Positions 35,291 through 62,601 of a stretch of DNA of 64,000 bases are shown in pieces. Source of the stretch: Macrostomum lignano (Eukaryota); NCBI GenBank assembly GCA_002269645.1, contig NIVC01001167.1, forward strand, positions 124,001-188,000. Reading direction: 5' to 3'. Within the stretch, counting starts at the first letter, position 1. Every line of letters begins with the position of its first letter. A program made the translations under genes and the position numbers. Below the pieces are notes generated by a model, which saw only the letters and a program-made list of their open reading frames with translations, did not search any database and was not told the DNA's origin.

Positions 35291-37584
35291 ATGCGAGCCC
35301 GACTCCGCACGGTGACCGGTGCCGCCCAGGAGGTGGCTGGCATCACGAGAACCCACGGCTTGCTGCACATCTTTCTGTCCAGAAGCACAGCTCGACGGAT
35401 CTTCTGGCTGCTTCTGTTCGTAGCTGCGCTGATCGGCTGCACCGTCCACCTGGCAAAGTTGGTGCAGAAGTTCACCGATCGCTCCGTTGAGTCGCAGCTG
35501 AAGCTGAGGAGCGAACGAGCCCAGTTTCCCGACGTCACAATCTGCAACTTCAAGCCCGCTTCTACTGGCTTAATGGAGGGGTTTTTTTTGAACGATACAT
35601 GGAAATCTTCTGGGGCAACTTCACCAACTGGTTCCAGGAGGACACCAAGAAGCGCCCGCAAGAATCAGAGGAAGGCTACGAAAATCGACTTGAGAAGGTG
35701 TGTAAGAAGCTCCTGGACGTGATGTGGGTGTCGGGCGACACCAGAGACGTCTCCCACCTCGATAAGACCATGCTGCTGAGCTGCCGCTACAACAACGAGC
35801 CCTGCAGTCACAAGAACTTCTCGCTTGTCCAGACCAGCCGGTTCTGGAGCTGCTACACGTTCCACCCGGACCCGGGGCAGTCGTCCAGCGGTCCTGGGGG
35901 CAGGGGAGCCGAGCTCGACATGGTGCTCTTCACCGACGGATACCACAAAGTTTCTATGGAAGACAATTTAATCGAAAACGACTTAGAATATTTGTCCCAA
36001 TCTTGCTCTACTCGCCTATTTAAATGCAGCAATGATGTCAACCGGGTGCTGCAGAACAACGAGCTCCAGTCCACTGGATTGCGCGTTTTCGTTCACGAGG
36101 CGAAAAGCTACCCAATGAGTCGTACGTAATTTTTGCTTTGCTACCTGCAAGTTTACGAGTATTATTCTAACAGTAAAAAAGCAGACCGCAAGCAGCAGCA
36201 AAGGTTGGTCTCATTTGCAGAGCCTAACCCAGTTGCTTGTCGTAATTATGTAATATTATTTATTTCTATTTTAGGATAGAGTCTGAAACAATTTTTATGT
36301 TACGGTTAAGAACTCTTCGTTCCAAACCAGTCTCATAGCCCATGCCAAACCCATGCCAAACCAGTCTCACAACCCATGCCAAACCAGTCTCACAGCCCAT
36401 GCCAAACCAGTCTCACAGCCCATGCCAAACCCATGCCAAACCAGTCTCACAGCCCATGCCAAACCCATGCCAAACCGCAGAGACCGAGTTCGTGGACGTG
36501 GCCTCAGCCACCAGCACCTCCATCAAACTCAGGCCGGTCCACAACCGACTCATGTCGAAGCCCAGCCGCAGATGCTCCGAGCCTCCAATCGAAACCATCA
36601 ACTATGTCAGGCACTTCTCCAACGCCTCGCTGAACGTGGTCACCAAGGCCTACTCAAAGTCCGTCTCCGATTTCGTAGTCGAGGCACAGCAGAGCATCCT
36701 GCACAGCAACTGCGGCTGCTATTCGCACCTGCTCGCGTTCTCGGTGAATACGAGCGACCTGTGCTACTTCGCTCCACCGCAGGAGTGGATCACCCCATCG
36801 GATGCTGTGCTCAAGAGAATTGACTGCCATGATCACTGGTTTGAGCACGCACAGAGGCAAAGCCAAGAGCTGGCGAAGGAGTTCCAACACCGGATGTGGT
36901 GCCAGTTCACTCAGCAACGGCCTTGGCAGCAGAGCCGCAGGTGGCCCCCGTTCAGCGCCATTCAAGAGATCTGGGAGAACCTGATGGTGCCGCAAGTCAG
37001 ACATGGAGTCGAGTTCCTGCCCGAGGATGGCAAAGTGCATCATATCTATAGGAATAATACAGGTAACTATACCAGACAGGTATTGCAACTAATACTGCTG
37101 GGACTTGTAGAAAAGTGCGACAGAAAAGGAATAAGTTTAAAAGATTTGGTTATGTCGAGTACGATTTGCGTTAAGCGTGACGAATTGGCCAAAAACCTGG
37201 CAGCAGTCCGCATCAGCTTGCAGAATCCTGCAGCGGACGTCTACGAAGAGAAGTACAAATACCACTGGACCGAGGCCCTGTCGGAGGTGAGAGTTGCATT
37301 CCGGTTGCAATATTCCCGCATTTGAGGCTGTTGCTCAGACCAAATTGCATGCTCATTTAAAATCGGCCCCAGCAACTTTGTCTCGCTCTGGTTGCCATAG
37401 AGATACTGAGCTGCGCTGTACCAATTTTCAATTTTTTCTCGATATTCCGCAGGTCGGAGGAACTCTGGGACTCTGGCTCGGCATCAGCGTCGTGAGCACA
37501 TTTGAGCTGCTTGAGTTCATCTATATTCTGGTGCAGAGGTGCAGGAGAAATGATGACGACTCGGACACTGAAGAAGAGTCCTGA
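35291..37584 (+). CDS. DEG/ENaC (ASIC/amiloride-sensitive-type) channel subunit, copy A, with an apparent 1-nt frameshift
   Basis: Exons 35291-36121, 36481-37286, 37453-37584. Motifs: TxHG pre-M1, TM1, FPDVTICN, CYTF, GLRVFVH, and TM2 SEVGGTLGLWLGISVVSTFELLEF. The frame breaks at T8 (35582-35589); one extra T restores it and the length relative to copies B and C. Could be a pseudogene or an assembly error. Confidence 0.85.
36322..36476. repeat. Young minisatellite (CCATGCCAAAC +/- CAGTCTCACAG) at the acceptor of ENaC-A intron 1
   Basis: Eight copies of CATGCCAAAC. The equivalent sequence is single-copy in paralogues B and C. Confidence 0.9.
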
Positions 37585-37689
37585 GTTCGAACCGGCAGCT
37601 CTCTGCATAGCGATTTGGATCGGTCACTGGGTTCAGTTTCAATGGCTGCTTCTTTATCACAGGCACAGCAAAAAAATACAAGAAAGTCC

Positions 37690-39630
37690 CTGTAATTTAC
37701 TGTCACTGCATGATAAATCTCTGTAATTTACTGTCACAGCATGATCAATCTCTGTAATTTACTGTCACTGCATGATAAATCTCTGTAATTTACTGTCACA
37801 GCATGACAAATCCCTGTAATTTACTGTCACAGAAGGATAAATCTCTGTAATTTACTGTCACAGCATGATCAATCCCTGTAATTTACTGTCACAGCCTGAT
37901 CAATCTCTGTAATTTACTGTCACAGAAGGATAAATCTCTGTAATTTACTGTCACAGAAGGATAAATCTCTGTAATTTACTGCCACAGCATGATCAATCTC
38001 TGTAATTTACTGTCACAGCATGATCAATCTCTGTAATTTACTGTCACAGCATGATCAATCTCTGTATTTACTGCCACAGCATGATCAATCTCTGTAATTT
38101 ACTGCCACAGCATGATCAATCTCTGTAATTTACTGTCACAGAAGGATAAATCTCTGTAATTTACTGTCACAGCATGATCAATCTCTGTATTTACTGTCAC
38201 AGAAGGATAAATCTCTGTAATTTACTGTCACAGAAGGATAAATCCCTGTAATTTACTGTCACAGAAGGATAAATCTCTGTAATTTACTGTCACAGCATGA
38301 TCAATCCCTGTAATTTACTGTCACAGCATGATCAATCTCTGTAATTACTGCCACAGCATGATCAATCTCTGTAATTTACTGTCACAGAAGGATAAATCTC
38401 TGTAATTACTGCCACAGCATGATCAATCTCTGTAATTTACTGTCACAGCCTGATCAATCTCTGTAATTACTGCCACAGCATGATCAATCTCTGTAATTTA
38501 CTGTCACAGAAGGATAAATCCCTGTAATTTACTGTCACAGAAGGATAAATCTCTGTAATTTACTGTCACAGCATGATCAATCCCTGTAATTTACTGTCAC
38601 AGCCTGATCAATCTCTGTAATTACTGCCACAGCATGATCAATCTCTGTAATTTACTGTCACAGAAGGATAAATCTCTGTAATTTACTGTCACAGCATGAT
38701 CAATCCCTGTAATTTACTGTCACAGCCTGATCAATCTCTGTAATTTACTGTCACAGAAGGATAAATCTCTGTAATTTACTGCCACAGCATGATCAATCTC
38801 TGTAATTTACTGTCACAGCCTGATCAATCTCTGTAATTTACTGCCACAGCATTATCAATCTCTGTAATTTACTGCCACAGCATGATCAATCTCTGTAATT
38901 TACTGTCACAGAAGGATAAATCCCTGTAATTTACTGTCACAGAAGGATAAATCTCTGTAATTTACTGTCACAGAAGGATAAATCTCTGTAATTTACTGCC
39001 ACAGCATGATCAATCTCTGTAATTTACTGTCACAGCATGATCAATCTCTGTAATTTACTGTCACAGCCTGATCAATCTCTGTAATTTACTGCCACAGCAT
39101 GATCAATCTCTGTAATTTACTGCCACAGCATGATCAATCTCTGTAATTTACTGCCACAGCATGATCAATCTCTGTAATTTACTGCCACAGCATGATCAAT
39201 CTCTGTAATTTACTGCCACAGCATGATCAATCTCTGTAATTTACTGCCACAGCATGATCAATCTCTGTAATTTACTGTCACAGCATGATCAATCTCTGTA
39301 ATTTACTGTCACAGAAGGATAAATCTCTGTAATTTACTGCCACAGCATGATCAATCTCTGTAATTTACTGCCACAGCATGATCAATCTCTGTAATTTACT
39401 GTCACAGCATGATCAATCTCTGTAATTTACTGTCACAGCATGATCAATCTCTGTAATTTACTGTCACAGCATGATCAATCTCTGTAATTTACTGCCACAG
39501 CATGATCAATCTCTGTATTTTACTGTCACAGCATGATCAATCTCTGTAATTTACTGCCACAGCATGATCAATCTCTGTAATTTACTGCCACAGCATGATC
39601 AATCTCTGTATTTTACTGTCACAGCATGAC
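37690..39630. repeat. 31-bp minisatellite ATCTCTGTAATTTACTGTCACAGCATGATCA
   Basis: About 60 copies, starting about 100 nt after the ENaC-A stop codon. Confidence 0.95.
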
Positions 39631-39929
39631 AGTGTCTTCAATATGGGATTCAGTTTTTCGAATATTAACAAGTGCGCAATTTGTTTGACCTTTTATGTAC
39701 CTAAAAACTACGAACCAATGTGTTCCTATCGCCAAAATACACCAACTCACAGCTAAATACTTTTCCTACATCCTTTGTTTTGAATATTTAAAAATTTATC
39801 TTTGTCAAAATTCTTTTGCTGGATTTAGTACACCATTTTGTTTTACAATTTTTAACAAATTCGACATAAATTCAAACTGCATAAGCGTGTTACAGTGGGT
39901 TACTTAATTGTCAGCTTGACCCTCAATTG

Positions 39930-40609: not shown

Positions 40610-41626
40610 ATGGCCGAACCGCATCAGCAGATGCTGCTGTTCCTGCTTCTCGGGAGCCTGCCGCTAGCTCACGCTGAATGCCGCTCCGCCATCACCAAAT
40701 ACACTGTGCTCAGCGCTAACCACTGCCTGAACAAGTCAAAGTCCGTGTGGCAGCTCAGCTCCGGGCGCTCCTCGTCAATGCTCGACTGCTTCGTGTCGAG
40801 TCGGTCGTTCCGTCTCGGCAGCGTCGGCCTAGTGCAGCGGAGCAAGCGAGACGCCTCGTGTGCGCTGTTCCGCTTCGGTGAGGTGTGCCGCCTGCTCAAC
40901 ATGACCTCCACGACACCGTCTGAGGGAGTGGCCGCTGAGAGCACCTGCGAGACCGTGGTGGACTCGGAGTACGACGCGATCGCTGCGAACGAGCACTTCA
41001 GCGCTGTGTGGGTCGGAGACAGGGGACCGGCGCTGGAGAACCTGGTGTGCGGCTCCGAGGGACAGAGGAACCCCATGAAGTCCAGCGGTGTCTCGTGGAC
41101 GAACGAAGGCGCTCGCATGGACGGAGTCTCGTCTCGGCTGTGGGTGGACGACCCCACAGGTCTGGACTTCACGGCGTCCTACACCTGGGTGCTGCACCTG
41201 AAGAGAACGCCAGGTTTAGCTAGCTTTCTAGAACTGAGCAGCTGCATCGGATCCGGCAGCAAGCTCGACCACCTGCAAGAGTACTCAGTGATGACCGGAG
41301 TGAGTCGCGCCCTCTTCCTGAACCCGGGTTACTTCGCCAGATTCCAGACCAGCTCGGTGCTACCTGCGGACCCGAACGAGTTCTTCATCGCTGGCGTCTC
41401 ATTCAGGAGGCAGCAGAACCTGACTCGCTTCTTCTATGGAGCAAAGTTTCTACCGACTGCCGGCGTCTTCGCTCGGACGAACAGCTTCAACCAAGCCGGA
41501 GCCTGCATCCATGTGGGCTGGCGGTATGACGGCACCTGCATGCTTTATGGTGTGGTCAGAGCCGTGGCGGTTTCTAATACGAATCTACCGGAAGAAACCA
41601 TCAATAAAATTTTCTTCGGAGTGTAA
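40610..41626 (+). CDS. Secreted protein: signal peptide, Cys-containing N-terminal (PAN/apple-like?) region, C-terminal ConA/LamG-like domain (338 aa, intronless)
   Basis: GC-rich ORF with a hydrophobic leader (MLLFLLLGSLPLAHA). The C-terminal GVVRAVAVSNTNLPEETI resembles the end of LamG/pentraxin-type beta-sandwiches. Domain names are inferred from patterns only. Confidence 0.7.
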   Translation: MAEPHQQMLLFLLLGSLPLAHAECRSAITKYTVLSANHCLNKSKSVWQLSSGRSSSMLDCFVSSRSFRLGSVGLVQRSKRDASCALFRFGEVCRLLNMTSTTPSEGVAAESTCETVVDSEYDAIAANEHFSAVWVGDRGPALENLVCGSEGQRNPMKSSGVSWTNEGARMDGVSSRLWVDDPTGLDFTASYTWVLHLKRTPGLASFLELSSCIGSGSKLDHLQEYSVMTGVSRALFLNPGYFARFQTSSVLPADPNEFFIAGVSFRRQQNLTRFFYGAKFLPTAGVFARTNSFNQAGACIHVGWRYDGTCMLYGVVRAVAVSNTNLPEETINKIFFGV

Positions 41627-43189
41627 ATTGATTGTAAAACGTCAGGAATTAACAAAAGGTTTTGAACAACTATTTTTTGAAATAAATATCAGTTATACCA
41701 ACTCCCTCTGGAAAGATCTATTTCCAGTTAAAGTTAATTTTGTTCAAGTTTTCCCGATATTTTTGAATTTTTCATGAGCCCAGGAACGCTTTTTTATCTT
41801 TGCTTTTACGAGTATCTATATGAATTTTCTACACATTTTAACTTCAAACGATCGAGACCGTTCCGTGCAAAAAAATGGCTACCCGTCCCTGGATGCTGTT
41901 AATTAAACTTTGTTGAGTACTTACAGTGCACTCGCTGTTATTGGTACGCTCTTAGACCTATAAATAACTTCTTCAAAATCAGGTTTATTGTTTGACTGCC
42001 TTATTGAAGAACCGTTTTATTTTTTCTAGACTTCAAGCAAGCATAATCTGAAATTATATTTTCAGGATGGAAGCTTCAAAGAGGCTTTTCAGAGTCAAAA
42101 TTAAAATATACATTCTATCATCTTGTTTTCAGGGTGATTGGGGCCTAAATCAGCTGTGCTTTAATGGAGGAGTTTTAATTGCTTTCATTCCACAATAGAG
42201 TCAACCGATAGAACAGGTTGCTGTCGAAAAGGAATTCGGATTAGGGCGCCGCAGGCTGGAACGGTAAGCACAAATTTTCGCATACCCGTGCAGCAACAGG
42301 ACGTCCGCCTACAACCCGACGTCAATGGACATTGTTGGCAAAATGATACTTCTATCTTACACCGAAGTATAACGACGCCATCCGTCGGCTGATTGTCGCA
42401 TGATTTAAATCAGATTGCTGTACAGGATACTCTATAACCGGATGCACAGTTTCAAAAAGCATGTAATTCAACTATTCTTAAATTATTAGTACTCACACGT
42501 GCCATTGTGATTATTTCACGACCTAACATTGAGCTACAGTAATGCAAAATATTCCTATATTCCTATGCTATTATCTTTAGTTGCTTCGTCCAAACTACGT
42601 AATTTAACTGCTGAATAAACAAAAAATCTATTAAGAGGCTTGTAACCACTGCTCCAAATAAAAGAGCAACGAAATTTAAATCGAAGTTCCCAAATAAGTG
42701 GGGCCCTTTTTAATTCACTAATTTAAGTGTTGACTTGCTTCTCCTGAAGCCAGAAAGGATCTAATTTTGCTGAAAGCTTGTACGCATTCATTTAAAGGCC
42801 GTATAAACAAATGGGGGACGGGGAAGCAAAAAGTCCATCTCGTTGAAAACGATAATGTCGTCAAATTTGCAAATTGGCCGATTTATATAAATTCAAAAAT
42901 GATAATTAGGATATGAAAAACAGCTCTTGGCCATGAAGATGTTTACAGCTATCGCCCGTCAGCCTGTCCATGCCCCCGCCCAGAAAGCTATGGGGGGCTT
43001 CCCATAATGCTTTGTCTCCCCGCCCCACCCACTTTGTGTACCGTTTTGTAAGTCAATAATTTTGCCTCAGGGCCCCAAAATGAGCAATCAACACCGATTC
43101 TTAAAATAATATAGGAATTTAATAATGCAAACTTCTCGCCTTTGTCCACCCATCATAAAATTCATGGCGATGCATAGTCTCGGGTTAGA

Positions 43190-43652
43190 AAACACCGCAG
43201 GTCTGGACTTCACGGCGTCCTACACCTGGGTGCTGCACCTGAAGAGAACTCCAGGAAAGCAGAGCTACTTGTCATGGGGCAGTTGCTGCAACGCTAGCAA
43301 AGAGGACATTCGATTTTTTGGGAAGAATATAAGCCTATGCTTAAAGTTGATTCCACTAATGAAAATTATTTACGGATCTGTCCTGCCCGCCAACGCTGAC
43401 CAATTCTTCACTGTCGGTGTGGTCCGGGACACGGCCGCAGGCAGGACTCAATTCTTTGTCAAATCGGAATTTTTCCCGAGGCAAAAAGTTTAATCGCTTC
43501 AAATATGACTGCAAGCAGTGGAAAGAGTTTCTGCTTGAAGATGGGCTGGCAAACTCTGGCCCAGCGGAGTCATCAAGGCTGTCGCCGTGACCAACCGGGT
43601 TCTGACTGAGGATCAGATCCTGATGCTTTTCCACCAGCAACTCAAATACTGA
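43190..43652 (+). pseudogene. Frameshifted 3' fragment paralogous to the 40610-41626 gene
   Basis: GLDFTASYTWVLHLKRTPG is identical to the 40610 gene, SVLPANADQFF aligns to SVLPADPNEFF, and GVIKAVAVTNRVLTEDQI aligns to GVVRAVAVSNTNLPEETI. In-frame stops lie between 43491 and 43560, and no 5' half was found. Confidence 0.65.
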
Positions 43653-43989
43653 GTGAGGTATGGACCATTCAAAATGCGTTGATGTACATGAAAACTGATA
43701 TGAACTGACATGAACTGACATGAACTGACATGAAAGCTAAGGCCGATTCTCATGCACCAGATGGGTTGCTGATGAGGCCGATTCTCATGCACCAGATGAG
43801 TGCTGAGGCCGATTCTCATGCACCAGATGAGTGCTGAGGCCGATTCTCATGCACCAGATGAGTGCTGAGGCCGATTCTAATCCGGCCTGCTCAGGGTTTG
43901 TTTCTCTGCTCAGCCCTCTTCTCTCCTCTCGCTTCTCTCCCATCTCACGTCTCTCCCTTATCTCCTCTTTCTTCTCTCTCCTCTCTCCT

Positions 43990-46900
43990 GAGAAACAGCA
44001 GATAGAGGGTTAAATACAGCGGATTGAGGGTGAGACACAGCAGATAGAGGGTCAGACACAGCGGATTGAGGGTCAGACACAGCGGATTGAGGGTGAGACA
44101 CAGCGGATTGAGGGTGAGACACAGCGGATTGAGGGTCAGACACAGCGGATTGAGGGTGAGACACAGCGGATTGAGGGTGAGACACAGCGGATTGAGGGTC
44201 AGACACAGCGGATTGAGGGTGAGACACAGCGGATTGAGGGTGAGACACAGCGGATTGAGGGTGAGACACAGCGGATTGAGGGTGAGACACAGCGGATTGA
44301 GGGTGAGACACAGCGGATTGAGGGTCAGACACAGCGGATTGAGGGTGAGACACAGCGGATTGAGGGTGAGACACAGCGGATTGAGGGTCAGACACAGCGG
44401 ATTGAGGGTGAGACACAGCGGATTGAGGGTGAGACACAGCGGATTGAGGGTGAGACACAGCGGATTGAGGGTGAGACACAGCGGATTGAGGGTGAGACAC
44501 AGCGGATTGAGGGTGAGACACAGCGGATTGAGGGTGAGACACAGCGGATTGAGGGTGAGACACAGCGGATTGAGGGTGAGACACAGCGGATTGAGGGTGA
44601 GACACAGCGGATTGAGGGTCAGACACAGCGGATTGAGGGTCAGACACAGCGGATTGAGGGTCAGACACAGCGGATTGAGGGTGAGACACAGCGGATTGAG
44701 GGTCAGACACAGCGGATTGAGGGTGAGACACAGCGGATTGAGGGTCAGACACAGCGGATTGAGGGTGAGACACAGCGGATTGAGGGTGAGACACAGCGGA
44801 TTGAGGGTCAGACACAGCGGATTGAGGGTGAGACACAGCGGATTGAGGGTGAGACACAGCGGATTGAGGGTGAGACACAGCGGATTGAGGGTGAGACACA
44901 GCGGATTGAGGGTGAGACACAGCGGATTGAGGGTGAGACACAGCGGATTGAGGGTGAGACACAGCGGATTGAGGGTGAGACACAGCGGATTGAGGGTCAG
45001 ACACAGCGGATTGAGGGTGAGACACAGCGGATTGAGGGTGAGACACAGCGGATTGAGGGTGAGACACAGCGGATTGAGGGTCAGACACAGCGGATTGAGG
45101 GTGAGACACAGCGGATTGAGGGTCAGACACAGCGGATTGAGGGTGAGACACAGCGGATTGAGGGTCAGACACAGCGGATTGAGGGTGAGACACAGCGGAT
45201 TGAGGGTGAGACACAGCGGATTGAGGGTCAGACACAGCGGATTGAGGGTCAGACACAGCGGATTGAGGGTGAGACACAGCGGATTGAGGGTGAGACACAG
45301 CGGATTGAGGGTGAGACACAGCGGATTGAGGGTGAGACACAGCGGATTGAGGGTGAGACACAGCGGATTGAGGGTGAGACACAGCGGATTGAGGGTGAGA
45401 CACAGCGGATTGAGGGTGAGACACAGCGGATTGAGGGTGAGACACAGCGGATTGAGGGTGAGACACAGCGGATTGAGGGTGAGACACAGCGGATTGAGGG
45501 TCAGACACAGCGGATTGAGGGTGAGACACAGCGGATTGAGGGTCAGACACAGCGGATTGAGGGTGAGACACAGCGGATTGAGGGTAAGACACAGCGGATT
45601 GAGGGTCAGACACAGCGGATTGAGGGTGAGACACAGCGGATTGAGGGTGAGACACAGCGGATTGAGGGTCAGACACAGCGGATTGAGGGTGAGACACAGC
45701 GGATTGAGGTTGAGACACAGCGGATTGAGGGTGAGACACAGCGGATTGAGGGTGAGACACAGCGGATTGAGGGTGAGACACAGCGGATTGAGGGTGAGAC
45801 ACAGCGGATTGAGGGTGAGACACAGCGGATTGAGGGTGAGACACAGCGGATTGAGGGTGAGACACAGCGGATTGAGGGTCAGACACAGCGGATTGAGGGT
45901 GAGACACAGCGGATTGAGGGTGAGACACAGCGGATTGAGGGTGAGACACAGCGGATTGAGGGTCAGACACAGCGGATTGAGGGTGAGACACAGCGGATTG
46001 AGGGTCAGACACAGCGGATTGAGGGTCAGACACAGCGGATTGAGGGTCAGACACAGCGGATTGAGGGTGAGACACAGCGGATTGAGGGTCAGACACAGCG
46101 GGTGGAGGGTCAGACACAGCGGATTGAGGGTCAGACACAGCGGATTGAGGGTGAGACACAGCGGATTGAGGGTCAGACACAGCGGGTGGAGGGTCAGACA
46201 CAGCGGGTGGAGGGTCAGACACAGCGGGTGGAGGGTCAGACACAGCGGATTGAGGGTCAGACACAGCGGATTGAGGGTGAGACACAGCGGATTGAGGGTC
46301 AGACACAGCGGGTGGAGGGTCAGACACAGCGGGTGGAGGGTCAGACACAGTGGTTGGAGGGTCAGACACAGCGGATTGAGGGTCAGACACAGCGGATTGA
46401 GGGTGAGACACAGCGGATTGAGGGTGAGACACAGCGGATTGAGGGTGAGACACAGCGGATTGAGGGTCAGACACAGCGGATTGAGGGTCAGACACAGCGG
46501 ATTGAGGGTCAGACACAGCGGATTGAGGGTGAGACACAGCGGATTGAGGGTGAGACACAGCGGATTGAGGGTGAGACACAGCGGATTGAGGGTCAGACAC
46601 AGCGGATTGAGGGTCAGACACAGCGGATTGAGGGTCAGACACAGCGGATTGAGGGTGAGACACAGCGGATTGAGGGTCAGACACAGCGGGTGGAGGGTCA
46701 GACACAGCGGATTGAGGGTGAGACACAGCGGATTGAGGGTGAGACACAGCGGATTGAGGGTCAGACACAGCGGGTGGAGGGTCAGACACAGCGGGTGGAG
46801 GGTCAGACACAGCGGGTGGAGGGTCAGACACAGCGGATTGAGGGTCAGACACAGCGGATTGAGGGTGAGACACAGCGGATTGAGGGTCAGACACAGCGGG

Positions 46901-47020
46901 TGGAGGGTCAGACACAGCGGGTGGAGGGTCAGACACAGTGGGTGGAGGGTCAGACACAGCGGATTGAGGGTCAGACACAGCGGATTGAGGGTGAGACACA
47001 GCAGACAGAGGGTGTGACAC
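43990..47020 (+). repeat. 21-bp satellite GACACAGCGGATTGAGGGT(C/G)A, about 140 copies
   Basis: Homogeneous array. A GCGGGTGG variant is concentrated after 46090. Confidence 0.98.
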
Positions 47021-48024: not shown

Positions 48025-50180
48025 TCAGTCTGGAGACCCCTCGGACTCCGAGCCGGTCGTTCCGCCGCGGCAGCGCTGCGCCAGGATGTAGAAAAACTCG
48101 AGCAGCTCGAACGTGCTGACAACGCTGATTCCCAGCCAGAGCCCCAGAGTTCCTCCAACCTGTGGGATTTCAAACGGCACCAACCAATCATTGATCGAGC
48201 ATGCGAAACTCGAAATAGCGTCAAACATCGCGTTTGATAAATAGACAGTCCTTGATGCAGTATTCTTTGCTAAAACATTAAAGTTACTTGAGAATTAGTT
48301 GGTTTGATAAGCTCCCGAGACAACTACTTCGACTGCAATGTTGATTAGCAGGAACACTCTCCGCATTTCTAAGGCCAATGTGTGAAATGCCTCACCTCGG
48401 ACAGAGCTTCAGTCCAGTGGTAGCCGGCCTTCTCTTTGTAAACGTCAGCTCCCGGGCTCTGCAAGCTGATGCTGACTGATGCCAGGGTGTCAGCCAAAGT
48501 TTTTTGGTAGATGCAGTAGGACATGTTTTTCAGATGCTGCAGCATCAAAGAAATGTTGCATTCGTAATAATAACTCCTGGTGGAATTTCTGCAGAAGAAG
48601 CTAAAGCAGTTATAGTCTTGCGTAAGAAACACCAAAATTTGCCCTAATTGTCGAGATTCATTCATATTCCTGAATATGTGATGCTCTTTGCCATCCTCGG
48701 GCAGGAACTCGACTCCATGTCTGTATTGCGGGGGCATCATCAGGTTCTCCCAGATCTCTTGAACGGCGCTGAACGGGGGCCACCTGCGGCTCTGCTGCCA
48801 AGGCCGTTGCTGAGTGAACTGGCACCACATCCGGTGCTGGAACTCCTTCGCCAGCTCCTCGCTTTTCCTCTGTGCGTGCTCGAGCCAGATGTCATGGCAG
48901 TCAATTCTCTTGAGCACAGCATCCGATGGGGTGATCCACTCCTGCGGTGGAGCGAAGTAGCACAGGTCGCTCGTATTTACCGAGAACGCGAGCAGGTGCG
49001 AATAGCAGCCGCAGTTGCTGTGCAGGATGCTCTGCTGTGCCTCGACTACGAAATCGGAGACGGACTTTGAGTAGGCCTTGGTGACCACGTTCAGCGAGGC
49101 GTTGGAGAAGTGCCTGACATAGTTGATGGTTTCGATTGGAGGCTCGGAGCATCTGCGGCTCGGCGTCGATATGAGTCGGTTGTGGACCGGCCTGAGTTTG
49201 ATGGAGGTGCTGGTGGCTGAGGCCACGTCCACAAACTCCGTCTCTGCAGTTTGGCATGGATTTTCCAGTGTCCGTTATCACGTAACTATTTTCTATAAAT
49301 GTTCCAATAAATGTTAAAATAACTCAAATAAGATCTCCATTAAATGATACGTACGGCTCATCGGGTAGCTGTGCGCCTCGTGAATAAAAAGTCGCAGTCC
49401 TTTCGACTGAGGATCACTGCTTTTCAGCAACCTGTTCGTCGCACCTTGACGCGCAATTAGTCGCTTGAAGCAGACTCCCACAGAATCGGAATTTAGGAAG
49501 TCATTATGAGGCTCAGAGGACACAGTGTAGCCATCGGTGAAGAGCACCATGTCCAGCTCGGCTCCCCTGCCCCCAGGACCGCTGTACGACTGCCCCGGGT
49601 CCGGGTGGAACGTGTAGCAGCTCCAGAACCGGCTGGTCTGGACAAGCGAGAAGTTCTTGTGACTGCAGGGCTCGTTGTTGTAGCGGCAGCTCAGCAGCAT
49701 GGTCTTATCGAGGTGGGAGATGTCTCTGGTGTCGCCCGACACCCACATCACGTCCAGGAGCTTCTTGCACACCGTCTCAAGTCGGTCTTCGTAGCTTTCA
49801 TCCGATTCTTGCGGGCGCTTCTTGGTGTCCTCCTGGAACCAGTTGTCGAATTTACCCCAATATTTTTTCAAGTAGTCGTGATAAACATCAAACCAAGTCA
49901 AAGATGAAGAAGCGGGCTTAAAGTTGCAAATTGTGACGTCGGGAAACTGGGCTCGTTCGCTCCTCAGCTTCAGCTGCGACTCAATGGAGTGCTCGGTGAA
50001 TTTCTGCACCAACTTGGCCAGGTGGACGGTGCAGCCGATCAGGGCAGCTACGAACAGAAGCAGCCAGAAGAGCCGTCGAGCTGTGCCTCTGGACAGGAAT
50101 ATGTGCAGCAAGCCGTGGGTTCTCGTGATGCCAGCCACCTCCTGGGCGGCACCGGTCACCGTGCGGAGTCGGGCTCGCAT
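48025..50180 (-). CDS. DEG/ENaC channel subunit, copy B (intact, 602 aa)
   Basis: Exons 50180-49355, 49243-48396, 48159-48025, GT-AG, with phases 1 and 0 as in copies A and C. Same family motifs (HG, FPDVTICN, GGTLGLWLGIS). Confidence 0.93.
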
Positions 50181-53824: not shown

Positions 53825-55806
53825 ATGCAGCACCGCCAGCTACTCGCTGCCTGCCTCGCCGCAGCCACTGCAGCTCTGCTGCTCACCGGCGCCGCCTCTG
53901 CTCAGTGTCCCGGACACGGCTGGACACACCGAGCTCACTCATGCTACAAGTGGTTCAGCGAGCCGAACTACTGGTTTCAGGCCGAGCAGACGTGTCTGTC
54001 TCACCGGGCTCACCTCGCGTCCATCCAAAGTGAGCAAGAGAACCGACTGGTAGGCCGACTGTCTCACTGCAGAGACGCCTGGATCGGTTTGTTCGGCACC
54101 GACCTCGACCGTCTGGCCGACCCTACAAGCTACAGGTGGACGGACGGCGGCGTAGGCGGCGTAGGGGGTTTGAGAGACACAACTTCTCTCAGCTGGACAG
54201 CGTTCACAAGCCTCTGATCCGAAGTGACGGTGAGTGGTGGCTCAACTCGCTGTATCACGAGCGGCACCCGTTTGTGTGCAAGTTGAGCGCCAACTCCAGC
54301 AGTCTCGTCGACTGGTGGCGGCGGTCGAAGGGCCGATGTCCCAGCGGCTGGTGGCTGCACGACAAGCAGTGCTACGTGATGCCGCAGTTTGAGGCCAACT
54401 TCAACGAGGCCAACTTCTACTGCCAGCGAAACTCGTCGCAGCTGGCGTCGGTGCTCACCCAGTCTGAGCTGGACTTTGTGAACAAGCTCAGCTTCGGAAT
54501 CGACAGCTGCGAGTCGGCAGAGCTGCTCGACTCGGTGTGGCTCGGCCTCATCAAGCTGAACCCCTGCTTCCCTGACAGTGCGGGTCGCGAGCTCTGCTAC
54601 CAGTGGACGGATTTCTCAGGGAAACACGACAACAAGCTGCCCGCATGGGAGACTGGACACCCGGACAGTGCGGACTGGACTGTGAACTGCGTCACGCTGT
54701 CAGCTGGTCGACTGCGCAGCGACAGGTGCCACAGCAGGCACAGGTTCGTGTGCAAGACGGAGGCGTCGGACGGGACCTCCACACCTGACGGAGGCGTCAC
54801 CTCCACACTTGACGGAGGCGTCACCTCCACACTTGACGGAGGCGTCACCTCCACACCTGACGGAGGCGTCACCTCTGCACCTGACGGAGGCGTCACCTCT
54901 GCACCTGACGGAGGCGTCACCTCTGCACCTGACGGAGGCGTCACCTCCACACCTGACGGAGGCGTCACCTCCACACCTGACGGAGGCGTCACCTCCACAC
55001 CTGACGGAGGCGTCACCTCTGCACCTGACGGAGGCGTCACCTCTGCACCTGACGGAGGCGTCACCTCTGCACCTGACGGAGGCGTCACCTCTGCACCTGA
55101 CGGAGGCGTCACTCCACCTGTGGACGGCCTCGTGGCTGCGTTCGACTTCAGGAGGGGCCTCGACAACCTGGTGGACCCGCGCACCTTCGCCATCGAGGAC
55201 CAGTTCGGCGTGGAGAGGTCGGCAGAGGACGGGGCCTGCTTTAAGTGGAACTCAACTTATCCATTCAATCACAGCGAGTTCTACAATGTCGGAGCTCCCG
55301 TGGCATTCAATGAGTCGATCTGGAACGCAGCAGAGTGGACCATGTACTTCAGGCTGACTCGGAGCAACGGCAGCAATGCTGACTTTGTATCAGTCCTCAG
55401 TGATTATTCAAACCCATTTTCATATTTCAGCTTTTTTGCCTGGCTTTATTCTTTTAGCGCTGACATCTTCTATTTAACTAGTTTTCAAGGTATACATCCT
55501 GGAAATATTAGACACAGAAATGACCATGTTTATAGAGGATCGGGCTGTGCTGGCAGCTGGTGCGACATTCGGCTGGCAATGAAAAACAGCATTTTGGATT
55601 CTCCTTCCATAGGAGAGCCGCTGAGAGTTGAATATCGGAACTGGACTTGGGGGGCTCAGGAACTGGGACTGCAGCAACTTCGATTAGGCATTTTCAATCC
55701 CCATCATGCCACATCTCAGCGACTCTGCATGAGGTGTTTCGGGGTCGCTCGCAGGCAGCTGAGCACCGATGAGGTGCGGCAGGCGATGTCGGCCTTGTGC
55801 CCGTGA
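53825..55806 (+). CDS. Secreted protein: two C-type lectin domains, Thr/Ser-rich repeat stalk, ConA/LamG-like C-terminal domain (intronless; apparent 1-nt frameshift)
   Basis: Signal peptide followed by CTLD motifs (CP..GW...SCY, WFQAEQTC...AHLASI, AWIGL, RWTDG, FVCK) and a second CTLD (CPSGW, EANFYC...LASV, VWLGL, YQWTD, NCV, FVCK). The frame changes at G5 (54164-54168), and one extra G joins the two ORFs. Confidence 0.82.
54784..55119 (+). repeat. Coding 24-bp repeat, 14 x (P/L)DGGVTS(T/A)
   Basis: In frame between CTLD2 and the C-terminal domain. Confidence 0.92.
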
Positions 55807-56489: not shown

Positions 56490-57200
56490 GGCTGTCTTGG
56501 GCTGGCTGTCATGGCGGCTGTCTAGGGGTGGCTGTCTTGGGCTGGCTGTCATGGCGGCTGTCTGGGGGTGGCTGTCTTGGGCTGGCTGTCATGGCGGCTG
56601 TCTGGGGGTGGCTGTCTTGGGCTGGCTGTCATGGCGGCTGTCTAGGGGTGGCTGTCTTGGGCTGGCTGTCATAACGGCTGTCTAGGGGTGGCTGTCTTGG
56701 GCTGGCTGTCATGGCGGCTGTCTAGGGGTGGCTGTCTTGGGCTGGCTGTCATGGCGGCTGTCTAGGGGGTGGCTGTCTTGGGCTGGCTGTCATGGCGGCT
56801 GTGTAGGGGGCTGGCTGTCATGGCGGCTGTCTAGGGGCTGGCTGTCATGGCGGCTGTCTAGGGGTGGCTGTCTTGGCGGCTGTCTAGGGGTGGCTGTCTT
56901 GGGCTGGCTGTCATGGCGGCTGTCTAGGTGGTGGCTGTCTTGGGCTGGCTGTCATGGCGGCTGTGTAGGGGGGGGGGGCTGTCTTGGGCTGGCTGTCATG
57001 GCGGCTGTCTAGGAGGTGGCTGTCTTGGGCTGGCTGTCATGGCGGCTGTCTAGGAGGTGGCTGTCTTGGGCTGGCTGTCATGGCGGCTGTCTAGGAGGTG
57101 GCTGTCTTGGGCTGGCTGTCATGGCGGCTGTGTAGGGGGGGGCTGTCTTGGGCTGGCTGTCATGGCGGCTGTCAAGGGGGGGGGCTGTCTTGGGGGCCGT
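56490..57200. repeat. 40-bp minisatellite built from GGCTGTC subunits
   Basis: Unit GGCTGTCTTGGGCTGGCTGTCATGGCGGCTGTCTAGGGGT. Confidence 0.92.
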
Positions 57201-58989: not shown

Positions 58990-59455
58990 TACGACATGAC
59001 TGGACAGAACAGAACAGGACAGGACATGACAGGACAGGACATGACAGGACATGACAGGACATGACAGGACATGGCAGGACATGACAGGACATGACAGGAC
59101 AGGACATGACAGGACATGACAGGACAGGACATGACAGGACATGACAGGACATGACAGGACATGGCAGGACATGACAGGACATGACAGGACAGGACATGAC
59201 AGGACATGACAGGACAGGACATGACAGGACATGACAGGACATGACAGGACATGACAGGACATGACAGGACATGACAGGACATGACAGGACAGGACAGGAC
59301 AGGACAAGATATGACAGGACAGGACAGGGCAGGACAGCACAGCATAGGACAGCACAGCATAGGACAGCATAGGAGAGCATAGGACAGCACAGCAAGGACA
59401 AGACAGCACAGCACAGCATAGGAGAGCACAGCACAGGACAGCTCAGGACAGCACA
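58990..59455. repeat. Pentamer-based microsatellite (GACAG/GACAT)
   Basis: Directly visible. Confidence 0.93.
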
Positions 59456-60134
59456 TTTCTTTGCCCGCCATTCATATTTTTCACGCCAAACTTTAAACCA
59501 TCCACTTCTCAGTAGTCAAGCTTTGCGCTGTGATTTAATGTATTGGCCCGTACTGTACCAGATTAGTCTTCATCCGACTCAGACCAGTCTTCATCCGACT
59601 TAGACCAGTCTTCATCCGACTCAGACAAGTCTTCTTCGCGCAACTCAGAGCAGCTCTCATTGGATTCAGACCTGTCTATTTTAGATTCAGGAAAAGCATG
59701 CAAAAGCAGCTTTTGGTAGGAGGCTGCGCCAGAGCATGTACATTCATGTGCAAGGTGGACCTGAGACAGGCCTACAGGATAGGTAGTGTGGCATTATTTG
59801 CTTTGCTTCCCTCGGATTTCCTTTCTTTCCAAGGACAACTTGGTATTGAGTAGTCCCTGTCTCTTTCTTGCGCTCAGAAAGTCTGTGGTATTGGTATATA
59901 CTCGTAGTTATCGGTGCAAGTATACCCAAGGGCACAAAAGTAAAAAATAATAATTTTTTTTCTATTTCATTGCGCTTGTGACATTCACCCATATAGCTAT
60001 ATGTTGAACACTGTGATGGCGGCAATCGGTCTATGGTCATAATTGTGCACTTCTGGTACGAGCCATCCTGATACGAGTATTCGTACTCTTTCTATAACTA
60101 GACGCGCGTATACAGAAACTTCACAAAGTAAAAA

Positions 60135-62601
60135 ATGCAAGACCGACTCCGCACGGTGACCGGTGCCGCCCAGGAGGTGGCTGGCATCACGAGAACCCAC
60201 GGCTTGCTGCACATCTTCCTGTCCAGAGGCTCAGCTCGACGGCTCTTCTGGCTGCTTCTGTTCGTAGCTGCGCTGATCGGCTGCACCGTCCACCTGGCAA
60301 AGTTGGTGCAGAAGTTCACCGAGCAGTCCGTTGAGTCGCAGCTGAAGCTGGGGAGCGAACGAGCCCAGTTTCCCGACATCACAATCTGCAACTTCAAGCC
60401 CGCTTCTGCTAGCTTAATAAGGTGGAATATTTATCACGACTACCTGAATGAATCTTGGGGCAACTTCGACAACTGGTTCCAGGAGGACACCAAGAAGCGC
60501 CCTCATGAATCGGATGAAAGCTACGAAGACCGACTTGAGACGGTGTGCAAGAAGCTCCTCGACGTGATGTGGGTGTCGGGCGACACCAGAGACATCTCCC
60601 ACCTCGATAAGACCATGCTGCTGAGCTGCCGCTACAACAACGAGCCCTGCAGTCACAAGAACTTCTCGCTTGTCCAGACCAGCCGATTCTGGAGCTGCTA
60701 CACGTTCCACCCGGACCCGGGGCAGTCGTCCAGCGGTTCTGGGGGCAGGGGAGCCGAGCTCGACATGGTGCTCTTCACCGATGGTTATGCCGAACCGTCT
60801 ATCCATCATTATGAATTCCTAAATTCCGAATCTGTGGGAGTCTGCGTCAATCGAATAATTTTGGGTCAGGATGCGACGAACAGGTTGCTGAAAAGCAGTG
60901 ATCCTCAGTCAGAAGGACTGCGACTTTTTATTCACGAGGCGCACAGCTACCCGATGAGCCGTACGTATCATTTCATTGAGGTCTTTTTTGAGTTGTATTC
61001 ATTTGAGAATTTACAGAAAAATAGTTCCATGATCACGGACACAAGAGAATCCATGTCAAACCGCAGAGACGGAGTTCGTGGATGTGGCCTCAGCCAGCAG
61101 CACCTTCATCAAACTCAGGCCGATCCACAACCGACTCATATCGACGCCGAGCCGCAGATGCTCCGAGCCTCCAATCGAAACCATCAACTATGTCAGGCAC
61201 TTCTCCAACGCCTCGCTGAATGTGGTCACCAAGGCCTACTCAAAGTCCGTCTCCGATTTCGTAGTCGAGGCACAGCAGAGCATCCTGCACAGCAACTGCG
61301 GCTGCTATTCGCACCTGCTCCCGTTCTCGGTGAATACGAGCGACCTGTGCTACTTCGCTCCACCGCAGGAGTGGATCACCCCATCGGATGCTGTGCTCAA
61401 GAGAATTGACTGCCATGATCACTGGTTTGAGCACGCACAGAGGCAAAGCGATGAGCTGGCGAAGGAGTTCCAGCACCGGATGTGGTGCCAATTCACTCAG
61501 TAACGGCCTTGGCAGCAGAGCCGCAGGTGGCCCCCGTTCAGCGCCATTCAAGAGATCTGGGAGAACCTGATGGTGCCGCAAGTGAGACATGGAGTCGAGT
61601 TCCTGCCCGAGGATGGCAAAGAGCATCACATATTCAGGAATATGAATCAATCTCGACAATACAGCCAAATTTTACCATTTCTAAACGACGATGACTGCAT
61701 GAGTTTCTTTTGCAATCACAGCCATACGGATTACTATTATTGCGATACTTTACTGATTCAGCTGTATTTGAAGCAAGCGTCGGGTTGCATCGAGCGGTAT
61801 ACTTTGTCTCGCAGCCTGGCGTCAGTCAGCATCAGCTTGCAGAGCCCGGCAGCTGACGTTTACAAAGAGAAGGCCGGCTACCACTGGACTGAAGCTCTGT
61901 CCGAGGTGAGACATTTCACACATATTGGCCTTAGAAATGCGGAGAGTGTTGCCACCTGTCAACATTGCAGTCGAAGTATATATACAGTTGTCTGATCGAG
62001 ACATTCATCCAGCTAACGAAAGTCCGTTCAAAGCGGACTAAAAACATTCTGTAAGTCCTGTTTTAACATTTGATATATGGCACTTTTGAGCAGCATTCTT
62101 TTTTTAAGTGATTTGAGATATTTGGTCTAAAATGTCTCAAGGTTAGAATTCCGTAGTGTTAAATAATACTTTAATAACTAAAATATATTAACCAAGGACA
62201 ATTAAAGCAACGTAATATACAGGACTTGACACTCGAAATCTATGGAAAATGTTTTGAAGGCCACTTTTCGCCGAAAATGCACTACCGGAGGTAACAAGTT
62301 TTCATTTTTCAGCACAAAAACTGTTATTGCTTTCGATAGGAGGCGAATCCAGTGTTCATATTTTGATATGATGTGCCTTTCTTATTGCTTTATTGATATT
62401 CATAAAGCTTTTCGTTCCGAAAATTAAGATTCAATGTTAATTTTTGATTCTACGGACATTCCGAAGGTCGGAGGAACTCTGGGGCTCTGGCTGGGAATCA
62501 GCGTTGTCAGCACCTTCGAGCTGCTCGAGTATTTCTACATTCTGGCGCAGCGATGTCGCGTCGGAACCACCGGCTCGGAGTCCGAGGGTTCTCCAGACTG
62601 A
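60135..62601 (+). pseudogene. DEG/ENaC channel subunit, copy C, with a premature stop
   Basis: Exons 60135-60960, 61067-61905, 62467-62601. TAA at 61501-61503 corresponds to CAA (Gln) in copies A and B. The last acceptor is CCGAAG versus CCGCAG/CCACAG in the others. Otherwise colinear. Confidence 0.85.

What the first reader, a model, noticed from the sequence alone, without database searches (positions are those of the whole stretch)
35291..62601. DEG/ENaC triad with near-identical framework and three hypervariable, AT-rich extracellular blocks
The three paralogues are almost identical in DNA over long stretches (TM1, DTKKRP...LDMVLFTDGY, most of exon 2). They switch abruptly to poorly alignable, visibly AT-richer sequence at the same three places. 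V1 follows FKPAS (A about 35564-35610). V2 follows FTDGY (A about 35944-36075). V3 lies between EDGK.HHI and SLQ (A about 37040-37205) and also differs in length and Cys number. Reading frames stay open through V2 and V3. The extracellular domain of DEG/ENaC channels determines ligand gating (established for ASIC and FaNaC), so this looks like a constant-framework/variable-loop receptor family, possibly chemosensory or immune-like. That functional reading is inference.
Basis: partly seen in the sequence, partly recalled or inferred. Interest (0 to 1): 0.72.

Follow-up and report, generated by a model that had tools for sequence, protein, structure and literature searches.

The report
Flatworm channel genes with variable patches
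Three neighbouring DEG/ENaC ion-channel genes of the flatworm Macrostomum lignano are kept almost identical over most of their length by copying between copies (gene conversion), while three short stretches stay old and different, two of them on elements that form the ligand pocket in related channels; only one of the three copies is intact, so the pattern is real and tidy but largely explained by known processes.

Summary
Copies A (+), B (-) and C (+) are three-exon DEG/ENaC genes (Pfam ASC, E 6e-51) of Macrostomum lignano. They are 93-100% identical over three coding tracts. Identity drops abruptly to 0-60%, and GC from about 0.6 to about 0.4, at the same three blocks.

- Only B is intact. 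A has a net -1 frameshift inside V1, shared with a second locus. C has an in-frame TAA at 61501-61503.
- The constant framework is not simply conserved. It is homogenised. Between the two old subfamilies, synonymous divergence is 0.02-0.24 in the framework but 0.8-1.2 in the equally conserved TM2 end. The V blocks are as old as that end. Introns do not align between subfamilies. 52% of informative site pairs in the framework fail the four-gamete test. This is interlocus gene conversion leaving old islands.
- dN/dS in the V blocks is 0.3-1.2, never clearly above 1.

Homology maps V1 to finger helix alpha1 and V2 to the beta6-beta7 loop, both walls of the FMRFamide pocket in FaNaC. V3 is a disulfide-bracketed, sequon-rich knuckle insertion.

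A constant-frame, variable-loop architecture is therefore supported. A chemosensory or immune role is not tested.

The parts
35291..37584 (+). Copy A, a DEG/ENaC gene of subfamily A/E/F/G. Exons 35291-36121, 36481-37286 and 37453-37584. Disabled by a frameshift.
   Evidence: Splice sites are C|GTACGT, CAG|AG, GAG|GTGAG and CAG|GT. The CDS length is 1769, which is 2 mod 3. The same lesion is present in locus L005, which is 99.6% identical.
35564..35625 (+). A V1. It contains the net -1 frameshift, somewhere between 35564 and 35610. The alignment places a 1-bp deletion at AACGA-TAC, about 35594/35595.
   Evidence: No GT-AG mini-intron restores the frame when the sequence is read directly.
35941..36045 (+). 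A V2 core (beta6-beta7 loop). The frame is open.
37050..37202 (+). A V3 (knuckle insertion). 51 codons, 2 Cys, frame open.
36735..36735 (+). The G (Ala in LLAFS) that is shared only with window copy B, at 48989. Every other copy has C, including the near-identical A2 and B2. This is a footprint of a very recent A-B conversion.
   Evidence: The chance of this coincidence is about 0.01 (my estimate).
48025..50180 (-). Copy B, the only intact gene of the three (602 aa), subfamily B/C/D. Exons 50180-49355, 49243-48396 and 48159-48025.
   Evidence: It is 99% identical to public protein P0001. Pfam ASC E 6e-51.
49845..49907 (-). B V1 (start of finger helix alpha1).
49431..49529 (-). B V2 core (beta6-beta7 loop).
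48480..48671 (-). B V3 (knuckle insertion). 64 codons, 4 Cys. It holds 4 of the protein's 7 N-x-S/T sequons.
60135..62601 (+). Copy C, subfamily B/C/D. Exons 60135-60960, 61067-61905 and 62467-62601. Interrupted by a nonsense codon.
   Evidence: An intact C-like protein (P0003) exists in another assembly.
61501..61503 (+). In-frame TAA (CAA in all other copies; FTQ*RPW) in the homogenised part of exon 2 of C.
60408..60470 (+). C V1.
60786..60884 (+). C V2 core.
61636..61821 (+). C V3. 62 codons, 4 Cys.

Best explanation
The three genes belong to a Macrostomum-specific DEG/ENaC subfamily with at least eight distinct members, about half of them pseudogenes. The family has two old lineages, {B,C,D} and {A,E,F,G}. 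Silent-site divergence between them is about 1 and their introns do not align.

Short-tract interlocus gene conversion repeatedly homogenises three coding tracts. These are the N-terminus with TM1, the alpha2-to-beta6 part of exon 1, and the first 560 bases of exon 2. Conversion acts across both lineages, across dispersed loci, and between intact genes and pseudogenes. Within a lineage it also covers the rest of the gene.

Three short blocks escape homogenisation. They keep deep, independently assorting variants, so each gene is a different V1/V2/V3 combination on a shared frame. The blocks lie at the upper outer corner of the extracellular domain:
- V1 is finger helix alpha1.
- V2 is the beta6-beta7 loop.
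- V3 is a disulfide-bracketed knuckle insertion.

In FaNaC channels this region forms the neuropeptide pocket.

Shown here: family membership, the lesions, the mosaic silent-site pattern, the recombination signal and the homology mapping of V1 and V2.

Inferred: the islands persist because differences there are tolerated or favoured (gating or ligand specificity), and because their divergence and indels now block heteroduplex formation. Their AT-richness reflects fast, weakly constrained evolution toward the AT-rich mutational background, without the GC-favouring effect of conversion or codon selection. In the window, only B can make a channel subunit.
For: Family: Pfam ASC scores 174 bits against a cut-off of 23.6. 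The best solved relative is Aplysia FaNaC 7yvb, at E 5e-25 for the single sequence and 1e-47 for the profile.

Silent-site mosaic:
- NG86 dS between lineages is 0.02-0.10 (F1), 0.08-0.24 (F2) and 0.05-0.17 (F3). It is 0.82-1.19 in F4, which includes TM2, where dN is only 0.09-0.14.
- At codons that encode the same amino acid, B and E differ in 13/337 framework codons, 18/46 F4 codons and 23/51 V-block codons. Fisher p is 7e-11 and 2e-14.

Recombination:
- In F4, 22 of 32 informative sites support BCD|AEF.
- In F1-F3, 53 informative sites scatter over many conflicting splits. 712 of 1378 site pairs fail the four-gamete test, giving Rm of at least 21. In F4 the figure is 37 of 496.

Blocks have different genealogies. 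V1 groups C with D, with 0/16 silent differences against 4/10 to B. V3 groups B with D, at 16% against 41% and 28%.

Introns and flanks align only within a lineage.

Recent event: the G at B-CDS 1081 is shared only by window A and window B. About half of the 13 differences between near-identical copies (A/A2, B/B2) fall on sites that vary among paralogues.

Pseudogenes F and G keep the homogenised framework.

The V blocks are coding. Frames are open in V2 and V3 in all copies except V2 of the pseudogene G. Two bracketing V3 cysteines are conserved out to 31-41%-identical relatives. Four of B's seven sequons lie in V3.

Mapping:
- V1 aligns to 8on7 from about V87, the start of alpha1.
- V2 lies just before beta7 (8on7 S252).
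- The FaNaC pocket is formed by alpha1-alpha3a, the beta6-beta7 loop and alpha6 of the neighbouring subunit (PMC11026163; PMC11993918).

Theory: peaks of divergence in converting duplicates mark regions where difference is maintained (PMC3924837).
Against: - dN/dS in the V blocks is 0.3-1.2 and never significantly above 1. Selection for diversity is therefore not demonstrated. Heterology alone could keep the islands once they had formed.
- FaNaC alpha6 aligns to the constant PFSAVQEIWENL segment, not to V3. V3 is a lineage-specific insertion after it, whose position relative to the pocket is unknown.
- The only structural model was unusable.
- The direct footprint of a recent conversion is a single nucleotide.
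- Conversion among loci on different contigs has to be frequent. That is inferred here, not observed.
- Two of the three window genes are dead, and some public gene models skip V2 or V3.
Confidence: 0.72

Rival explanations
1. The copies are recently duplicated or strongly conserved receptors. Positive diversifying selection has driven rapid amino-acid change in three ligand-contacting loops. The constant frame reflects purifying selection.
For: The blocks sit on or next to elements that form the ligand pocket in FaNaC. Frames, cysteines and sequons are retained. The closest comparisons give omega near or above 1: V2 B-D 1.18, V1 E-F 1.20, V3 F-G 2.45.
Against: - Silent sites in the V blocks are 5-10 times more diverged than in the framework. 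They equal those of the conserved TM2 end, which amino-acid selection cannot produce.
- Pseudogenes share the constant frame.
- Introns do not align between the lineages.
- No omega is significantly above 1, and the highest values involve pseudogenes F and G.
Confidence: 0.12
2. Relaxed constraint only. V1-V3 are structurally permissive surface loops that drift neutrally. Once they diverged and gained indels they became barriers to conversion. The family is a decaying birth-and-death array with no specificity role for the blocks.
For: Omega is 0.3-1.2. GC3 in the blocks is intermediate between introns and framework. Finger sequences are hard to align even within the FaNaC family (PMC11026163). 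A, C, F and G are disabled.
Against: The reading frame stays open through about 60 AT-rich codons in three V3 types that are saturated at silent sites. The bracketing cysteines are conserved out to 31-41%-identical relatives, and the sequons are retained. Omega is 0.37-0.47 for V1 and V3 between the intact genes B and D. These show continuing constraint rather than free drift.
Confidence: 0.3
3. Locally raised mutation rate (targeted hypermutation) in the three AT-rich blocks.
For: Silent and replacement divergence are both high in the blocks, and the boundaries are abrupt.
Against: - Silent divergence in the blocks (33-56% of same-amino-acid codons) equals that of F4 (39%), which is not hypervariable in protein.
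- C and D share a nearly identical V1, while B and C share V2. This fits exchange of old variants, not continuous hypermutation.
- The near-identical copies A/A2 and B/B2 show no excess of differences in the blocks, with about 5 of 13 there.
Confidence: 0.03
4. Assembly or polishing artefact. Multi-mapped reads homogenised the paralogues' similar parts during consensus polishing.
For: The genome is highly repetitive. Indel lesions occur in some copies.
Against: The same mosaic is seen in the window, in six loci of assembly GCA_002269645.1 and in proteins from a third annotation. Paralogue-specific framework variants are reproduced between the window and that assembly, with B/B2 differing at 5 of 2156 bases and A/A2 at 10 of 2294. 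Polishing would not create 21 or more recombination breakpoints with consistent haplotypes.
Confidence: 0.03

Closest known systems
FMRFamide-gated sodium channels (FaNaC; Aplysia 7yvb/7yvc, Malacoceros FaNaC1 8on7-8ona)
   Same: FaNaC is the best solved relative by sequence. It shares the fold signature: the HG motif, FPxVTICN, the Cys-rich thumb and G-I-S in TM2. The FaNaC peptide pocket is built from alpha1-alpha3a, the beta6-beta7 loop and the neighbouring subunit's alpha6 (PMC11026163). V1 and V2 coincide with the first two elements. Finger sequences are also notably divergent within FaNaCs.
   Different: Identity is only about 25-30%. alpha2-alpha3 and the alpha6-equivalent are constant in this family. 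V3 is an extra Cys-bracketed insertion after alpha6. No agonist is known. Three other M. lignano DEG/ENaCs near the FaNaC clade gave no current with FMRFa-type peptides (PMC9234716), and they were not shown to be this subfamily.
Duplicated genes under gene conversion with peaks of divergence (human red/green opsins, RHD/RHCE, clustered protocadherins; Teshima and Innan model)
   Same: Low divergence is maintained by frequent short-tract conversion. It is interrupted by sharp peaks where paralogue differences persist (PMC3924837; copepod GOT1, PMC3728101). Intermediate segments show conflicting genealogies.
   Different: Here the exchange involves at least seven loci on at least five contigs, including pseudogenes. 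Three separate islands assort independently. Selection on the islands is not demonstrated (omega about 1 or below).
Lineage-specific DEG/ENaC expansions (Drosophila pickpocket, C. elegans degenerins/ACD/DEL, Hydra HyNaC)
   Same: Large species-restricted families whose extracellular finger region varies most. Some members are chemosensory or peptide-gated (my own knowledge, not tested here).
   Different: I know of no report of DNA-level concerted evolution of the frame with discrete old islands in those families. That is recall, not a search result.
Acid-sensing ion channels (ASIC1, for example 2qts, 6ave)
   Same: Same family and topology. They align over TM1 to beta6 and over beta11 to TM2.
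   Different: ASIC has a short knuckle (alpha6-alpha7) without the V3 insertion. Proton sensing uses the acidic pocket between thumb and finger. No comparable paralogue mosaic is known.

Membership tests
DEG/ENaC (Pfam ASC, PF00858) | Full-length match to the family HMM above the curated threshold | tested here: met
   174.3 bits against a cut-off of 23.6, E 6e-51, residues 19-580 of B on profile positions 5-455 of 455.
DEG/ENaC (Pfam ASC, PF00858) | Two transmembrane helices flanking a large Cys-rich extracellular domain, with the HG motif, post-TM1 FPxVTxCN and a G-x-S selectivity motif in TM2 | tested here: met
   Read from the B translation: THGLLHI, FPDVTICN, GLWLGISVVSTFELLE, and 16 extracellular Cys. 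TM1 and TM2 align to ASIC, FaNaC and ENaC chains.
DEG/ENaC (Pfam ASC, PF00858) | Trimeric, amiloride-sensitive cation channel activity | not testable with these tools
   Needs expression and electrophysiology.
FaNaC (peptide-gated branch) | Gating by FMRFamide-type neuropeptides | not testable with these tools
   There is only indirect literature. Three other M. lignano DEG/ENaCs (Mlig049925.g2, Mlig051885.g1, Mlig041003.g1) did not respond (PMC9234716). Their relation to this subfamily was not established.
FaNaC (peptide-gated branch) | Placement inside the FaNaC clade in a phylogeny | not tested
   FaNaC is the best PDB hit, but no tree was built. All 12 closest library representatives are M. 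lignano proteins.
Multigene family under concerted evolution by interlocus gene conversion | Silent-site divergence far lower in some segments than in others of the same gene pair | tested here: met
   dS 0.02-0.24 against 0.82-1.19; Fisher p 7e-11.
Multigene family under concerted evolution by interlocus gene conversion | Conflicting genealogies or four-gamete failures among neighbouring segments | tested here: met
   52% of framework site pairs are incompatible, Rm is at least 21, and V1 and V3 group the copies differently.
Multigene family under concerted evolution by interlocus gene conversion | Paralogues within a species more alike than orthologues between species | not testable with these tools
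   No other Macrostomum genome was available in the collections searched.
Diversifying-selection receptor repertoire (immune-like or chemosensory) | dN/dS above 1 concentrated in the variable segments | tested here: not met
   omega is 0.3-1.2. The values above 1 rest on fewer than 10 silent changes or involve pseudogenes.
Diversifying-selection receptor repertoire (immune-like or chemosensory) | Variable segments exposed and clustered on the folded protein | tested here: inconclusive
   The AlphaFold2 model has pLDDT 47.8 and is unusable. Homology puts V1 and V2 on the FaNaC pocket walls. V3 carries 4 sequons, but its position is unknown.
Diversifying-selection receptor repertoire (immune-like or chemosensory) | Expression in sensory or immune cell types | not testable with these tools
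   No expression data were available.

The most novel reading that the evidence does not exclude
The subfamily is a combinatorial ligand-gated (peptide or small-molecule) receptor repertoire. V1, V2 and V3 together line a FaNaC-like pocket at the subunit corner. Gene conversion in the shared frame acts as a shuffling device that reassorts old V1/V2/V3 variants among loci, with pseudogenes serving as variant reservoirs. This would generate new pocket combinations in the germ line, in the way V-pseudogene conversion does for chicken immunoglobulin genes.
Probability: 0.15. Interest if true: 0.8.

Novelty: new member of a known kind. Interest (0 to 1): 0.42.

Why it matters
If the V blocks do set agonist or gating specificity, this family would be a natural set of pocket chimaeras on one fixed scaffold. 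That would be a ready-made experiment on how DEG/ENaC finger and knuckle elements encode ligand recognition, in a phylum where no DEG/ENaC agonist is known.

Independently of function, it is a clean and strongly supported example of exon-restricted concerted evolution, with independently assorting islands of old divergence, in an animal ion-channel family.

It is also a warning for annotation and phylogenetics. Trees built from these genes mix histories. Two of the three look-alike genes are dead. Near-identity here does not mean recent duplication.

Tried and rejected
- Structure: AlphaFold2 on P0001 with the only alignment permitted (10 M. lignano sequences) gave pLDDT 47.8 and pTM 0.40. I did not use it for exposure or for fold search.
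- Wider homologue searches: two further word-indexed searches with family alignments found only M. lignano proteins. In one search I set the E-value cut too strictly. No deeper alignment could be built.
- Rescuing A's frameshift with a mini-intron: the only GT in the T-run context is in phase 2, while the nearest AG (before GAGGAC) is in phase 0. I rejected this by reading the sequence.
- V blocks as unrecognised introns or skipped cassettes: public models P0003 (skips V2), P0005 (skips V3) and P0008 (splices out of V3, out of frame) suggested it. Against it, V2 plus its tail includes the conserved beta7 GLRxFIH strand. V2 and V3 also stay in frame with conserved Cys across saturated divergence, and full-length models P0001, P0002, P0004 and P0006 keep them.
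- NG86 dS inflation by multi-hit codons in the V blocks: I controlled for this by counting only codons with identical amino acids. The result held.
- Global intron alignments: my aligner has a high random baseline of about 0.5-0.65, so I state only that introns align within a lineage and not between lineages.
- Literature: no paper links M. lignano to gene conversion in this family.

Full report
WHAT IS THERE

The region holds three paralogous three-exon genes.
- A: plus strand, exons 35291-36121, 36481-37286, 37453-37584.
- B: minus strand, exons 50180-49355, 49243-48396, 48159-48025.
- C: plus strand, exons 60135-60960, 61067-61905, 62467-62601.

A and B are tail to tail, 10.4 kb apart. B and C are head to head, 10 kb apart. 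Splice sites are conserved: C|GTACGT, CAG|AG in phase 1, GAG|GTGAG in phase 0, and (C/A)AG|GT.

B translates to an intact 602-residue protein that matches Pfam ASC (PF00858) end to end, at 174 bits against a cut-off of 23.6 and E 6e-51. It carries the family landmarks: THGLLHI, FPDVTICN, 16 extracellular cysteines, and GLWLGISVVSTFELLE in TM2.

The organism is the free-living flatworm Macrostomum lignano. B is 99% identical to the public protein BOX15_Mlig025378g2 (P0001). Every relative found was from that species. This includes the 12 closest named representatives in an exhaustive HMMER scan of 1.8 billion sequences.

CHECK OF THE OBSERVATION

In 30-column windows, the three copies are 0.90-1.00 identical over B-CDS 1-270, 348-646 and 820-1386. 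Identity falls abruptly at the same three places.

In window coordinates:
- V1: A 35564-35625, B 49845-49907, C 60408-60470
- V2 core: A 35941-36045, B 49431-49529, C 60786-60884
- V3: A 37050-37202, B 48480-48671, C 61636-61821

GC is 0.33-0.44, 0.44-0.52 and 0.37-0.42 in the three blocks, against 0.57-0.61 in the frame. GC3 is 0.41-0.67 against 0.75-0.86. Introns are at 0.32-0.46. V3 differs in length (51, 64 and 62 codons) and in cysteine number (2, 4 and 4). V2 and V3 are open in all three copies.

First, A is out of frame inside V1. The CDS is 1769 nt, and the alignment places a 1-bp deletion near 35594/35595. The lesion is shared by a second locus, L005 on contig NIVC01000038.1, which differs from A at 10 of 2294 bases. 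It is therefore real and not a read error. Public annotation splits that gene in two at this point (P0169 and P0008).

Second, C has an in-frame TAA at 61501-61503 where all other copies have CAA. An intact C-like protein, P0003, exists in another assembly.

Only B can encode a channel subunit.

THE WIDER FAMILY

I fetched six more loci from assembly GCA_002269645.1.
- D: intact, 600 aa, a singleton on another contig.
- E: intact, 610 aa, on another contig.
- F: a +2 frameshift and a lost exon-3 acceptor.
- G: seven indels.
- B2 and A2: near-identical to B and A.

Proteins P0005/P0009 and P0006 add two more V types.

The family splits into {B,C,D} and {A,E,F,G}. The split is marked by the C-terminal tail, by intron 1 length (106-111 against 261-359) and by whether introns and flanks can be aligned. 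V1, V2 and V3 are variable at the same positions in every member, including relatives that are 31-41% identical.

WHY THE FRAME IS CONSTANT

The decisive result concerns silent sites.

Between the two lineages, NG86 dS is:
- 0.02-0.10 in F1 (CDS 1-273)
- 0.08-0.24 in F2 (337-651)
- 0.05-0.17 in F3 (835-1398)
- 0.82-1.19 in F4 (1591-1764: beta11, beta12 and TM2), where the protein is well conserved (dN 0.09-0.14)

I then counted only codons that encode the same amino acid, which avoids multi-hit artefacts. B and E differ in 13/337 framework codons, 18/46 F4 codons and 23/51 V-block codons. Fisher p is 7e-11 and 2e-14.

So the V blocks are not hypermutated. They are as old as the unconverted 3' end. 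It is the frame that is anomalously young.

In F4, 22 of 32 informative sites support BCD|AEF. In F1-F3, the 53 informative sites scatter over many conflicting splits. 52% of site pairs fail the four-gamete test, giving a Hudson-Kaplan Rm of at least 21. In F4 the figure is 7%.

Pseudogenes F and G carry the same homogenised frame, so purifying selection cannot be the cause.

Introns between homogenised exon tracts do not align between lineages. Tracts are therefore short and confined to the exons.

Within {B,C,D} the introns and F4 are also similar, yet V1 and V3 remain deeply diverged. V3 of B and C differs at 13/32 same-amino-acid codons, against 22/397 elsewhere (p 9e-8).

The blocks also have different genealogies. 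C and D share V1, B and D are closest in V3, and all three are close in V2. Each gene is thus a different combination of old V variants.

There is a footprint of a very recent event. The G at B-CDS 1081 (window 48989 in B, 36735 in A) is shared only by the two neighbouring window copies. It is absent from their near-identical counterparts B2 and A2 and from all other paralogues. About half of the 13 A/A2 and B/B2 differences lie at sites that vary among paralogues, although only about 10% of frame sites do so.

This is the textbook signature of interlocus gene conversion with peaks of divergence (PMC3924837; PMC3728101).

SELECTION ON THE BLOCKS

dN/dS in the blocks is 0.28-0.38 (V1, B against C, D or E), 0.80-1.18 (V2 within {B,C,D}), 0.40-0.65 (V3 within {B,C,D}), and about 1.1-2.5 for pairs involving pseudogenes F and G. 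None is significantly above 1.

The blocks are not decaying, however.
- V2 and V3 stay in frame through about 60 AT-rich codons in types that are saturated at silent sites.
- The first and last V3 cysteines are conserved out to P0012 and P0014.
- Four of B's seven N-x-S/T sequons lie in V3.

The data fit weak constraint with tolerated or favoured diversity. They do not discriminate between diversifying selection and permissive drift combined with a heterology barrier.

WHERE THE BLOCKS SIT

The AlphaFold2 model was unusable, with pLDDT 47.8.

The family profile aligns to solved chains as follows.
- V1 falls at the start of finger helix alpha1, about V87 onward in Malacoceros FaNaC1 (8on7).
- V2 falls between beta6 (LDMVLFTD) and beta7 (GLRLFIH, which matches 8on7 S252-EGVRVVIH). 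It is therefore the beta6-beta7 loop.

In FaNaC1 the FMRFamide pocket is formed by alpha1-alpha3a (V87-F144), the beta6-beta7 loop (D234-G241) and alpha6 of the adjacent subunit (G423-K428) (PMC11026163; also PMC11993918).

The alpha6-equivalent here is the constant PFSAVQEIWENL, just after the WP motif. V3 is a further insertion of 50-65 residues between alpha6 and beta11 in the knuckle.

Two blocks therefore coincide with pocket walls. The third is adjacent to the third wall, but its position is unknown. alpha2-alpha3, which carry the key FMRFa contacts in FaNaC1, are constant in this family.

Three other M. lignano DEG/ENaCs near the FaNaC clade gave no currents with candidate peptides (PMC9234716).

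VERDICT

The pattern is real and statistically overwhelming. Its main cause is concerted evolution of three exon tracts in an old, partly decayed, Macrostomum-specific DEG/ENaC subfamily. The constant-frame, variable-loop description holds. Placement of V1 and V2 on FaNaC pocket elements makes a specificity role plausible.

Selection for diversity, solvent exposure, expression and any chemosensory or immune role remain untested. Two of the three window copies are pseudogenes.

The genes are already annotated as amiloride-sensitive channels, and the evolutionary mechanism is a known one. I rate the finding as a new member of a known kind, of moderate interest.

Noticed in passing
window 1-34734, 37690-39629, 43989-47024, 56490-57194, 58993-59455, 63326-64000: The window is dominated by long minisatellite arrays. 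Examples are a 30-bp unit x154 at 30026-34647, a 21-bp unit x145 at 43989-47024, and a 31-bp unit x63 immediately 3' of copy A. They create very long spurious ORFs on both strands.
   Followed up: partly
window 40610-41626 (+) and 43185-43631 (+): A 338-aa ORF with a signal-peptide-like N-terminus and no Pfam hit, plus a diverged partial paralogue (35% identity). The same gene lies 3' of A-type copies in L005 (15768-16775) and L003 (17184-18191). A 76% relative lies 3' of copy E in L002 (14791-15426, minus). The A and E loci are therefore old segmental or whole-genome duplicates.
   Followed up: partly
window 54136-55806 (+): A C-type lectin domain gene (PF00059, E 1e-10) with fourteen 24-bp (8-aa, TS(T/A)PDGGV) repeats at 54775-55117, lying between copies B and C. 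The same gene neighbours B2 in L003.
   Followed up: no
L001 13184-13505 (-): A relic of a DEG/ENaC exon 2, 48-78% identical in protein, about 1 kb 3' of the intact singleton copy D. It is a trace of a lost tandem partner.
   Followed up: no
window 36322-36476: Intron 1 of copy A contains a 57-bp tandem repeat (CCAAACCAGTCTCACAGCCCATG...). It accounts for much of the intron-length difference from B and C. It also fuses in frame with exon 2 to give a misleading 327-aa ORF.
   Followed up: no
window 36654-37088 (-), 48648-49070 (+), 61240-61668 (-): Antisense ORFs of 140-144 aa run through the homogenised exon-2 tract of all three copies. They are most likely a by-product of high GC3 and of the conversion that keeps the tract identical. 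I did not test them as genes.
   Followed up: no
public proteins P0003, P0005, P0008, P0169 (loci L005 and others): Public gene models treat the variable blocks inconsistently. P0003 skips V2 via a GT at the V2 start. P0005 skips V3. P0008 splices from a GT inside V3 to exon 3 out of frame. A2 is split into two genes at the V1 frameshift.
   Followed up: partly
L003, L005 and window (A and B loci): At least three versions of the A locus, about 99.5% identical, exist: the window, contig NIVC01000349.1 and contig NIVC01000038.1. This is consistent with retained haplotypes or recent polyploidy in this species.
   Followed up: no
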